DNA of 59,758 nucleotides, filler included, from Sluysia triapertura (Eukaryota): the NCBI GenBank assembly GCA_046118255.1. It is 5 parts of 5 records of this genome, joined end to end, with 100 filler letters (N's around TTAATTAATTAA, not from the genome) between each part and the next. Parts side by side here need not be neighbours in the genome. Positions count along the whole stretch, not along the records: positions 24,477 to 35,712 come from JBJNIA010187013.1; 4 more parts are not named here. One strand, 5' to 3'. Position numbers and translations under genes: made by a program. The notes under the pieces were generated by a model. The model did no database searches. It had not been told where the DNA came from and saw only the letters and a program-made list of their open reading frames with translations. Positions 28,605 to 28,761 of this stretch are shown in pieces (the stretch's first letter is position 1; the number at the start of each line of letters is the position of its first letter).

Positions 28605-28761
28605 CCACCATCAATGCTGACATTACTGAGTACTGTATGTAAATTCACGTATATAAATTGATGGTGGCTCATCTCTCAATCAACTAGCTCCTGATCTTTA
28701 TTGTTGGTAGTCCAACCAGAGTTATTCTAATCACTAATTTTGTACGTTTCTCTGGTTGGAC
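28605..28761 (+). promoter_or_regulatory. Double inverted-repeat element
   Basis: Perfect 11-bp IR ccaccatcaat (28605-15) / attgatggtgg (28657-67) and perfect 12-bp IR gtccaaccagag (28710-21) / ctctggttggac (28750-61). It lies 120 bp before the ATG at 28881. Confidence 0.75.

What the first reader, a model, noticed from the sequence alone, without database searches (positions are those of the whole stretch)
28605..28761. Conserved double inverted-repeat element with a compensatory change upstream of two family-A loci
Seen: two consecutive perfect IRs (11 bp with 41-nt spacer; 12 bp with 28-nt spacer). A homologue at 15545-15688 has the same order relative to its ORF and similar spacing (39 versus 41 nt, and about 40 versus 42 nt). 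Both arms changed together (ccaCcat/atGgtgg versus ccaCTat/atAgtgg), while the spacers diverged. A half-site taccaccatgaa lies upstream of the 36.9-kb copy. Inference: symmetry is under selection, suggesting an origin, recombination or resolution site, dimer-binding promoter, or structured RNA.
Basis: partly seen in the sequence, partly recalled or inferred. Interest (0 to 1): 0.75.

Follow-up and report, generated by a model that had tools for sequence, protein, structure and literature searches.

The report
Twin hairpin repeats beside channel gene
Two adjacent perfect inverted repeats are real and far beyond chance, but they sit just before (probably inside the transcript of) a divergent flatworm-type sodium-channel gene, and with only one copy to read their claimed conservation and function cannot be tested here.

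Summary
Both inverted repeats exist exactly as described: 28605-28615/28657-28667 (11 bp, 41-nt spacer) and 28710-28721/28750-28761 (12 bp, 28-nt spacer, extending imperfectly to 28689-28782). Two such repeats never arose in 5000 local shuffles. The second copy, the paired change and the half-site lie outside my piece, and no DNA of this organism was reachable, so covariation is untested.

The neighbouring "family A" gene is a divergent DEG/ENaC (amiloride-sensitive) channel of flatworm type. Its last exon (from about 30194) keeps 17 of the 19 residues invariant in relatives. The long frame after the element (28867-29699) starts at an acceptor-like site, has no first membrane helix and carries two in-frame stops.

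The repeats lie in a 220-bp, GC-richer island dense in short motifs. It also holds a CCAAT box, a TATAA and a strong donor-like GTATGT inside the loop of repeat 1.

My best reading (confidence 0.35) is a pair of pre-mRNA stem-loops in the intron or exon-intron junction before the ectodomain exon, inherited with gene duplicates. The rivals are a transposon or mutational relic (0.28), a promoter module (0.20) and a small-RNA hairpin (0.07). No Rfam family, transposon signature or relative's intron supports any of these firmly. Interest is modest.

The parts
28605..28615 (+). IR1 left arm (CCACCATCAAT)
   Evidence: It is an exact complement of 28657-28667.
28657..28667 (+). IR1 right arm, 41 nt after the left arm
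   Evidence: Hairpin 1 (28601-28671) folds at -20.4 kcal/mol, z -3.05.
28710..28721 (+). IR2 left arm (GTCCAACCAGAG)
28750..28761 (+). IR2 right arm, 28 nt after the left arm
28689..28782 (+). Extended hairpin 2: 33-nt arms at 73% complementarity, 26 predicted pairs, 28-nt loop
   Evidence: I1. RNA -33.1 kcal/mol, z -4.98 on the + strand and -29.0, z -5.54 on the - strand; as DNA, z -4.45.
28770..28781 (-). Third, imperfect copy of the IR1 motif (one base shorter). It is a direct repeat of the IR1 right arm, 115 nt downstream.
   Evidence: (D4: a 9-nt direct repeat at 28655 and 28770) and the sequence.
28565..28785 (.). GC-richer island (about 37% G+C in about 23% flanks) dense in short motifs. 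CAATCAA occurs 3 times, ATCAAT/ATTGAT 5 times and CCA(A)CCA 4 times.
   Evidence: One search gives counts against the rest of the piece: 3 of the 5 CAATCAA in 11 kb, 5 ATCAAT against 0.43 expected, and 4 CCA(A)CCA against 0.04 expected. This test was chosen after seeing the sequence.
28635..28640 (+). Donor-like GTATGT inside the loop of IR1 (hypothetical 5' splice site)
   Evidence: It is phase-compatible with the acceptor at 28866. It is not supported by relatives.
28764..28799 (+). CCAAT box (GGCCAATCA, 28764-28768) and TATAA (28795-28799), 82-117 nt before the first ATG of the long frame (28881)
   Evidence: Sequence. This is motif presence only.
28858..28866 (+). Acceptor-like TTTTTGCAG. 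The long frame opens 4 codons upstream of it.
28867..29699 (+). Long frame of the 'family A' gene, presumed ectodomain exon. It is open except for two in-frame stops, has no membrane helix and has no detectable homology to relatives.
   Evidence: frame. (no homology). (maximum hydropathy 0.89). (no family or relative).
30194..31034 (+). Last exon of the DEG/ENaC-like gene: Cys-rich region, pore helix and second membrane helix, then an Asn/Asp-rich low-complexity tail
   Evidence: Pfam ASC, E 0.0094. (solved DEG/ENaC channels). (flatworm channels, 37-47% identity). (own profile, E 1.4e-38). (17 of 19 invariant residues kept). (relatives' last exon starts at the same place).
28475..28634 (+). 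Candidate upstream exon (hypothesis only): an open frame with a strongly hydrophobic stretch. The IR1 left arm would be coding here.
   Evidence: hydropathy 2.74; phase fits. Against: not significant; codon usage below the null; relatives have no intron here.

Best explanation
The two inverted repeats are a real pair of stem-loop-forming sequences. They lie in a 220-bp motif-dense island just 5' of the large ectodomain exon of a divergent flatworm-type DEG/ENaC channel gene.

That exon begins at an acceptor-like site and lacks the start codon region and the first membrane helix that every channel of this family needs. The island is therefore most likely part of the gene's primary transcript. 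It would be the 3' half of the preceding intron, or an exon-intron junction with the GTATGT donor in the loop of hairpin 1, and not a site in front of the gene.

Inferred mechanism: the stem-loops act at the pre-mRNA level. Hairpin 2 would loop out about 94 nt and shorten the path between donor and branch point, as zipper stems do in yeast introns. Hairpin 1 would hold the donor in a defined loop. The element was copied along with the gene when the family expanded.

Shown: the repeats, their non-randomness, the predicted folds, the identity of the gene, the absence of a first membrane helix downstream, and the splice-like signals with matching phase. Inferred: transcription of the island, the intron itself, and any effect on splicing.
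For: - The repeats are exact and non-random.
- Two stable stem-loops are predicted. The whole element folds at -54.5 kcal/mol, z -4.64. Hairpin 2 has 26 pairs, z -4.98.
- The gene is a DEG/ENaC channel with a well-kept pore module, retaining 17 of 19 residues invariant in 20 flatworm relatives. An upstream exon with the first membrane helix should therefore exist or have existed.
- The frame after the element has no hydrophobic helix (maximum 0.89). It opens only 4 codons before TTTTTGCAG at 28858-28866.
- The strongest donor-like site, GTATGT at 28635, is the only one of three nearby GT sites whose phase fits that acceptor. The frame it closes (28475-28634) holds the only strongly hydrophobic stretch just upstream (2.74).
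- Stems that shorten intron paths are documented as widespread in yeast introns (PMC12350175).
Against: - Relatives in Spirometra and Hymenolepis have no intron at this position. Their first exon runs from residue 1 to about 199-205.
- The candidate upstream exon is not significantly like the family. Its codon usage scores below the null of open non-coding frames. Hydrophobic open frames are common in this AT-rich DNA.
- The long frame carries two in-frame stops and shows no detectable homology to the family's ectodomain. The copy may be a dead or 5'-truncated gene.
- The stems are almost purely Watson-Crick and equally good on both strands, so nothing points to RNA rather than DNA.
- There are no transcript data and no second copy.
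Confidence: 0.35

Rival explanations
1. A relic with no function. The repeats are leftovers of a small foldback or MITE-like transposon, or the subterminal motif region of a larger DNA transposon. Alternatively they are products of template-switch (quasi-palindrome) mutation, which makes arms perfect and can change both arms together without any selection.
For: - Most spaced inverted repeats in animal genomes come from mobile DNA (my own knowledge).
- The island is a cluster of short motifs in both orientations, as in the subterminal regions of DNA transposons.
- The surroundings are repeat-rich. There are tRNA-like SINE heads at 24891-24971 and 31577-31648. A long inverted pair, 26401-26989 against 32634-32129, brackets the gene.
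- The gene copy carries two in-frame stops and lacks a first membrane helix, as a captured or decayed fragment would.
- The stems are pure Watson-Crick on both strands.
Against: - There is no other copy or half-site of either arm in 11 kb, even with mismatches.
- No target-site duplication or terminal structure could be identified.
- Units of 52-63 bp are smaller than usual MITEs.
- No tandem-unit homology exists between the two hairpins.
- The pore exon of the gene is well conserved.
Confidence: 0.28
2. A proximal promoter module. The island is untranscribed DNA in which the repeated motifs, including the repeat arms, are binding sites for transcription factors, upstream of a CCAAT box and a TATA-like box.
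For: - It is a GC-richer island directly before the first ATG of the long frame.
- It holds same-sense CAATCAA three times at about 90-104-nt spacing, plus ATCAAT and CCA(A)CCA clusters.
- GGCCAATCA at 28762-28770 fits the extended NF-Y type consensus (my own knowledge). TATAA lies 27 nt further on and the ATG at 28881.
- Equal stability on both strands fits a DNA-level role.
Against: - A protein starting at 28881 would lack the first membrane helix and N-terminus of the family.
- Perfect 11-12-bp identity between two sites 40-52 bp apart is not what factor sites need. Paired changes in both arms, if real, are not expected for them.
- TATAA and CCAAT are common in 25% G+C DNA (13 CCAAT in the piece).
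- The motif enrichment was tested after the fact.
- No like cluster exists upstream of relatives' genes.
Confidence: 0.2
3. An independent small-RNA gene hosted beside or inside the channel gene. Hairpin 2 would be a microRNA-like precursor, or the pair of hairpins a snoRNA-like RNA.
For: - Hairpin 2 has the size and shape of an animal microRNA precursor: 94 nt, 26 pairs, z about -5.
Against: - No Rfam family reaches threshold. The only hits are generic plant or animal microRNA models at 14-23 bits against gathering scores of 48-84.
- Hairpin 1 has an 11-bp stem with a 41-nt loop, which is unlike a microRNA precursor.
- The H/ACA layout fails. The + strand has no H box or ACA. On the - strand the ACA lies 20 nt from the stem.
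Confidence: 0.07
4. A DNA-level origin, recombination or resolution site, or pure chance.
For: Symmetry alone.
Against: - Chance is excluded at below 1 in 5000.
- No recombinase, replication or transposase gene lies in the piece.
- Stems with 28-41-nt loops are poor cruciforms. As DNA the folds reach only -10.5 and -15.8 kcal/mol.
- The setting is a nuclear animal gene.
Confidence: 0.03

Closest known systems
Zipper stems and downstream stems of spliceosomal introns (Saccharomyces; PMC12350175)
   Same: A stable intronic stem-loop that loops out tens of nucleotides between the donor and the branch point or acceptor. Here hairpin 2 (94 nt) would sit between a donor-like site at 28635 and an acceptor-like site at 28866.
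   Different: The intron itself is only inferred here and is not shared by relatives. The organism is a flatworm-like animal, not yeast. There are no probing or splicing data. Hairpin 1 would pair exon with intron, which zipper stems do not.
Exon-intron duplexes with an intronic complementary sequence that guide ADAR editing in ion-channel pre-mRNAs (PMC9479739)
   Same: Under the exon-intron model, the IR1 left arm is coding sequence of an ion-channel gene. Its exact complement lies 41 nt away in the intron, with the donor in the loop. This is the layout of classic editing hairpins.
   Different: The perfect duplex is only 11 bp, with 21 pairs in the predicted fold. The exon is unproven. There is no RNA-DNA comparison. 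I did not test whether this organism has the enzyme.
MITEs and foldback elements
   Same: Short inverted repeats with a spacer, in a repeat-rich, AT-rich genome.
   Different: There are no further copies in 11 kb and no target-site duplication. The units of 52-94 bp are very small. Two different repeats lie side by side.
Animal microRNA precursors
   Same: Hairpin 2 has 26 pairs in 94 nt and folds much better than shuffles.
   Different: No family match. The 28-nt loop is large. There are no small-RNA data. Hairpin 1 does not fit.
CCAAT/TATA core promoters with clustered factor sites
   Same: CCAAT and TATAA lie in the usual order and spacing before an ATG, with a homotypic motif cluster upstream.
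   Different: The protein made from that ATG would lack the family's first membrane helix. The motifs are frequent in this base composition. No start site is known.
Flatworm DEG/ENaC (amiloride-sensitive) channel genes, e.g. Spirometra, Hymenolepis and Schistosoma proteins P0005, P0051, P0004
   Same: The last exon is homologous (37-47% identity), starts at the same position as in relatives, and keeps 17 of 19 invariant residues.
   Different: The 5' two-thirds shows no detectable homology, carries two in-frame stops and has no contiguous first membrane helix. Relatives show no comparable repeats or motif cluster at their 5' ends.

Membership tests
DEG/ENaC channel (Pfam ASC, PF00858), the neighbouring 'family A' gene | C-terminal pore module: Cys pattern, pore helix with the G-x-S motif, second membrane helix | tested here: met
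   Pfam ASC E 0.0094, below the curated cut-off. Solved DEG/ENaC channels E 4e-4. 32 relatives in the exhaustive search, the best at E 1.9e-19. Own profile E 1.4e-38. 17 of 19 invariant residues kept. Hydropathy 1.92.
DEG/ENaC channel (Pfam ASC, PF00858), the neighbouring 'family A' gene | N-terminus with a first membrane helix | tested here: inconclusive
   None in 28869-29699 (maximum hydropathy 0.89). A hydrophobic open frame at 28475-28634 fits in phase, but it is not significant by profile or by codon usage.
DEG/ENaC channel (Pfam ASC, PF00858), the neighbouring 'family A' gene | Homologous N-terminal half of the ectodomain | tested here: not met
   hhalign probability 0.1% or less for all three pieces. 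Profile search of the frame with X at the stops scored -1.9 bits.
Covariation-supported structured RNA | Compensatory changes in both arms across homologous copies | not testable with these tools
   The second copy lies outside the piece. There is no copy inside it. No sequence of the same organism is in the collections. The metagenome pattern hits are chance.
Any Rfam family | Score at or above the family's gathering threshold | tested here: not met
   Nothing at the element in the whole-piece scan. In the permissive scan of 28540-28880 the best hit was 23.1 bits against a gathering score of 65.
MITE / small DNA transposon | Multiple dispersed copies independent of the gene | tested here: inconclusive
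   No other copy in the 11.2 kb available.
MITE / small DNA transposon | Terminal inverted repeats at the element ends, flanked by a target-site duplication | tested here: not met
   The bases flanking the outer arms (28601-28604 against 28782-28785, and each repeat alone) show no direct duplication in the sequence. There is no empty site to compare.
Animal microRNA precursor | Hairpin of about 60-100 nt with 20 or more pairs, folding better than shuffles | tested here: met
   Hairpin 2 only: 94 nt, 26 pairs, z -4.98.
Animal microRNA precursor | Discrete roughly 22-nt products, or a match to a known family | tested here: not met
   No family match. Small-RNA reads are not available.
H/ACA snoRNA | Hairpin, H box (ANANNA), hairpin, then ACA next to the 3' stem | tested here: not met
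   On the + strand there is no ANANNA in the hinge and no ACA in the tail. On the - strand ANANNA is present but the ACA lies 20 nt after the stem.
Spliceosomal intron carrying structured stems | GT-AG bounds with compatible phase | tested here: met
   GTATGT at 28635 and TTTTTGCAG ending at 28866. The donor exon ends at codon position 1 and the acceptor exon starts at position 2.
Spliceosomal intron carrying structured stems | Intron shared by relatives or seen in transcripts | tested here: not met
   The first exon of the Spirometra and Hymenolepis genes is uninterrupted to residue 199-205. Transcripts are not available.
ADAR editing hairpin (exon plus intronic complement) | Exon-intron duplex around an edited adenosine; A-to-G differences between RNA and DNA | not testable with these tools
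   The geometry would fit only if 28475-28634 is an exon, which is unproven. There are no RNA data.
CCAAT/TATA promoter | Motifs in order and spacing before the start of transcription | tested here: inconclusive
   The motifs are present. The transcription start is unknown, and the motifs are frequent at this base composition.

The most novel reading that the evidence does not exclude
The left arm of repeat 1 is coding sequence, just after the first membrane helix, of a flatworm DEG/ENaC channel. Its exact complement is an intronic guide sequence. A family of channel genes would then keep an exon-intron hairpin that holds the donor site in its loop, either to direct A-to-I recoding or to gate splicing of the channel's first exon, with a second zipper-like hairpin in the same intron. 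This would be a lineage-specific intron gained together with its own RNA structure.
Probability: 0.06. Interest if true: 0.6.

Novelty: new member of a known kind. Interest (0 to 1): 0.3.

Why it matters
Almost no cis-acting RNA or DNA elements are known for such genomes. It could give a concrete case of intron structure, or an exon-intron duplex, evolving together with a gene family. If it does not hold up, the element is one more repeat-derived palindrome next to a decaying gene copy. The main practical result here is the correction of context. The element lies next to, and probably within, a DEG/ENaC-like gene whose 5' part is unresolved, not in front of a complete gene.

Tried and rejected
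**Looking for more copies**
- Word searches with two exons of the gene found nothing.
- The exhaustive protein search found only other flatworm species, at 47% identity or less. Their contigs share no DNA with the piece.
- One metagenome scan for IR1 gave six hits with no flanking similarity and other base compositions. I take these as chance.
- Self-comparison of the piece found no second copy.

**Known RNA families**
- There were no matches beyond generic hairpin noise. The H/ACA layout was rejected.

**Tandem duplication of the two hairpins**
- The alignment shows only the shared CAATCAA motif, and TRF finds no such array. Rejected.

**Homology of the long frame and of the candidate upstream exon to the channel family**
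- None was detectable.

**Codon-usage test of the candidate exon**
- It gave no support.

**Intron shared with relatives**
- Not shared at this place. Only the last intron is shared.

**The same element upstream of relatives' genes**
- Absent.

**Strand call from G-U pairs**
- Uninformative.

**The ORF at 25572-25808 on the minus strand**
- I had guessed it to be transposon-related. It has no Pfam hit and no homologue, so I dropped the guess.

**Bacterial promoter and terminator scan**
- Not used, because the DNA is eukaryotic.

**Species**
- One literature search to name it gave nothing usable.

Exons were searched apart, by reference.
- The N run was left alone.
- Nothing outside 24477-35712 was read.

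Full report
**1. The observation**

- IR1 has arms of 11 bp at 28605-28615 and 28657-28667, 41 nt apart.
- IR2 has arms of 12 bp at 28710-28721 and 28750-28761, 28 nt apart.
- IR2 is the perfect core of a longer imperfect repeat with 33-nt arms at 73% complementarity, 28689-28782.

They are the only perfect repeats of this kind with G+C in the arms in the whole 11.2 kb. A first-order Markov model of the piece expects 0.029 such loci, and none of 1000 simulations had two within 200 nt. Dinucleotide shuffles of just the local 196 nt, which is richer in G+C, gave one such repeat in 23 of 5000 and two in 0 of 5000.

The rest of the finding lies outside the piece. That covers the homologue at 15545-15688, the paired arm change, the spacings and the half-site. 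I did not read any of it.

**2. What surrounds it**

The DNA is about 25% G+C, has few long frames, microsatellites and an assembly gap. It is eukaryotic.

The frame 30189-31034 matches the C-terminal part of DEG/ENaC channels.
- Pfam ASC matches weakly.
- Solved channels such as PDPNaC1 and BRTNaC1 match.
- The exhaustive protein search found 32 relatives. All those with names come from parasitic flatworms (Dibothriocephalus, Schistosoma, Spirometra, Opisthorchis, Fasciola, Hymenolepis, Protopolystoma), at 37-47% identity.
- A profile of 30 full-length relatives hits this exon at E 1.4e-38.
- It keeps 17 of the 19 residues that are invariant in 20 relatives over that range.
- In Spirometra and Hymenolepis the gene has three exons. 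The last starts at residue 281-287, which corresponds to the window's exon start near 30194. That intron is shared.

The species itself is not in the collections. The best identity is 47%, and the fetched contigs share no DNA with the piece.

**3. The frame right after the element**

The stretch 28854-29699 is one frame of 282 codons, open except for two in-frame stops. That is far too long for non-coding DNA of this composition, so it is or recently was coding. Even so, it shows:
- no Pfam family;
- no relative in the word search;
- no similarity to the family's ectodomain by BLAST, profile or profile-profile comparison, even when read through with X at the stops;
- no membrane helix, with a maximum hydropathy of 0.89 against 1.92 for the pore exon.

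The frame opens four codons before an acceptor-like TTTTTGCAG ending at 28866. Upstream of that it is closed by four stops in 20 codons. It is not a complete gene.

**4. Anatomy of the element**

The repeats lie in an island, 28565-28785, of about 37% G+C within about 23% flanks. The island is dense in short motifs (this test was chosen after seeing the sequence).
- CAATCAA occurs three times in the same sense, which is three of the five in the piece.
- ATCAAT or its complement occurs five times, against 0.43 expected.
- CCA(A)CCA or its complement occurs four times, against 0.04 expected.

A third, one-base-shorter copy of the IR1 motif lies at 28770-28781. A CCAAT box (28764) and a TATAA (28795) precede the first ATG of the long frame (28881). 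A donor-like GTATGT (28635) lies in the loop of IR1.

As RNA the 196 nt fold into two stem-loops, at -54.5 kcal/mol and z -4.6 on the + strand and -51.9 and z -4.0 on the - strand. Hairpin 2 alone has 26 pairs and z about -5. Almost all pairs are Watson-Crick, so neither strand and neither nucleic acid is favoured. As DNA the folds are weak in absolute terms.

**5. Tests of identity**

- Rfam gives nothing at threshold.
- The H/ACA layout fails.
- The two hairpins are not tandem duplicates of each other.
- No further copies or half-sites lie in the piece.
- A metagenome scan gave only chance matches.
- Relatives' genes have no such element at their 5' ends.

**6. A splice hypothesis, and its limits**

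Of three GT sites before the stop that closes the frame 28475-28639, only GTATGT at 28635 has the phase that fits the single acceptor at 28866. That upstream frame contains the only strongly hydrophobic stretch just before the element (2.74). By eye, what follows it resembles the family's post-helix segment. hhalign also places it at the end of the first helix, but with a probability of only 0.3%.

If this is right, the IR1 left arm is coding, its complement is intronic, the donor sits in the loop, and IR2 is a stem inside a 232-nt intron.

Several results count against it. Relatives have no intron there. The profile scores are not significant. The codon usage of the candidate exon is below the null. 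Hydrophobic open frames are common in this DNA.

Each was searched apart, by reference, and the joined test is left out.

**7. Explanation chosen**

The pore exon is well conserved, so the gene should have, or should have had, an upstream exon with the first helix. The exon after the element starts at an acceptor-like site. The island is therefore most likely transcribed as intron, or as an exon-intron junction.

The geometry is two stable helices with long loops and perfect arms. That fits RNA helices that shape an intron, as zipper and downstream stems do in yeast (PMC12350175), better than it fits paired factor sites. I give this 0.35.

The rivals are as follows.
- A mobile-element or template-switch relic: 0.28. 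The region is repeat-rich and the gene copy looks damaged.
- A promoter module: 0.20.
- A small-RNA hairpin: 0.07.
- An origin or recombination site, or chance: 0.03.

**8. Novelty and verdict**

Nothing here matches a described family. Gene-linked hairpins, structured introns and repeat-derived palindromes are all known kinds, and the one feature that would make this special, paired evolution of the arms, could not be tested. I rate it as a new member of a known kind, with interest 0.3.

The most novel reading still open is an exon-intron guide hairpin in an ion-channel gene family, like the editing hairpins of other channels (PMC9479739). I give it 0.06.

Noticed in passing
window 28867-29699 (+): A 277-282-codon frame with two in-frame stops and no detectable homology to anything. 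It is joined by position and strand to a well-conserved DEG/ENaC pore exon. It is either a very fast-evolving ectodomain or a recently dead copy.
   Followed up: partly
window 24891-24971 (-) and 31577-31648 (-): Two tRNA-like sequences (Rfam tRNA, 27.4 and 41.8 bits) that ARAGORN does not call. They share 82% identity over about 72 nt, including sequence beyond the tRNA part (24938-25009 against 31615-31687). They look like heads of a tRNA-derived SINE family.
   Followed up: partly
window 26401-26989 (and weakly to 28012) against 32634-32129 (to 32032): A long inverted pair of 65-74% identity brackets the channel gene and the SINE-like copy. It could be two copies of a dispersed repeat in opposite orientation, or the diverged long terminal repeats of a large DNA element that carries the gene fragment.
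   Followed up: partly
window 30911-31033 against 35290-35417 (+/+): The last about 125 nt of the channel frame, just before its stop, recur at 78% identity 4.3 kb downstream. Both copies are followed by AAT-type microsatellite. The 3' end of the frame may run into a repeat.
   Followed up: no
window 30560-31034 (+): After the second membrane helix the frame continues for about 150 codons of Asn/Asp-rich low complexity made of AAT/GAT repeats. This is an unusually long cytoplasmic tail for this channel family.
   Followed up: no
window 28499-28543: A palindromic microsatellite, (AAT)n followed by (ATT)n, lies 60 nt before IR1. In translation it produces the hydrophobic run that I considered as a first membrane helix.
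   Followed up: partly
window 30058-30175: A GTA/GCA-type trinucleotide microsatellite lies inside the presumed last intron (29700-30193).
   Followed up: no
window 28360-28401: A 16-nt direct repeat (88% identical) with 26-nt spacing lies about 200 nt before the element. It is another candidate regulatory or repeat motif.
   Followed up: no
window 25288-25808 (-): Two adjoining open frames of 96 and 79 codons on the minus strand have no Pfam hit. The 79-codon one also has no homologue in the word search.
   Followed up: partly
window 31066-31200: A run of 135 N (assembly gap or mask) lies 30 nt after the end of the channel frame. I left it as it stands.
   Followed up: no
L009, L010, L011 (Spirometra, Hymenolepis, Schistosoma rodhaini genes): The two cestode channel genes share a three-exon layout with very long introns: exon 1 to residue about 199-205, a middle exon of about 83 residues, and a last exon from residue about 281-287. 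For the Schistosoma gene (L011) only two matched blocks were recovered (residues 1-177 and 249-618), so its middle part is unresolved. The window gene has no intron at the first of these positions.
   Followed up: partly
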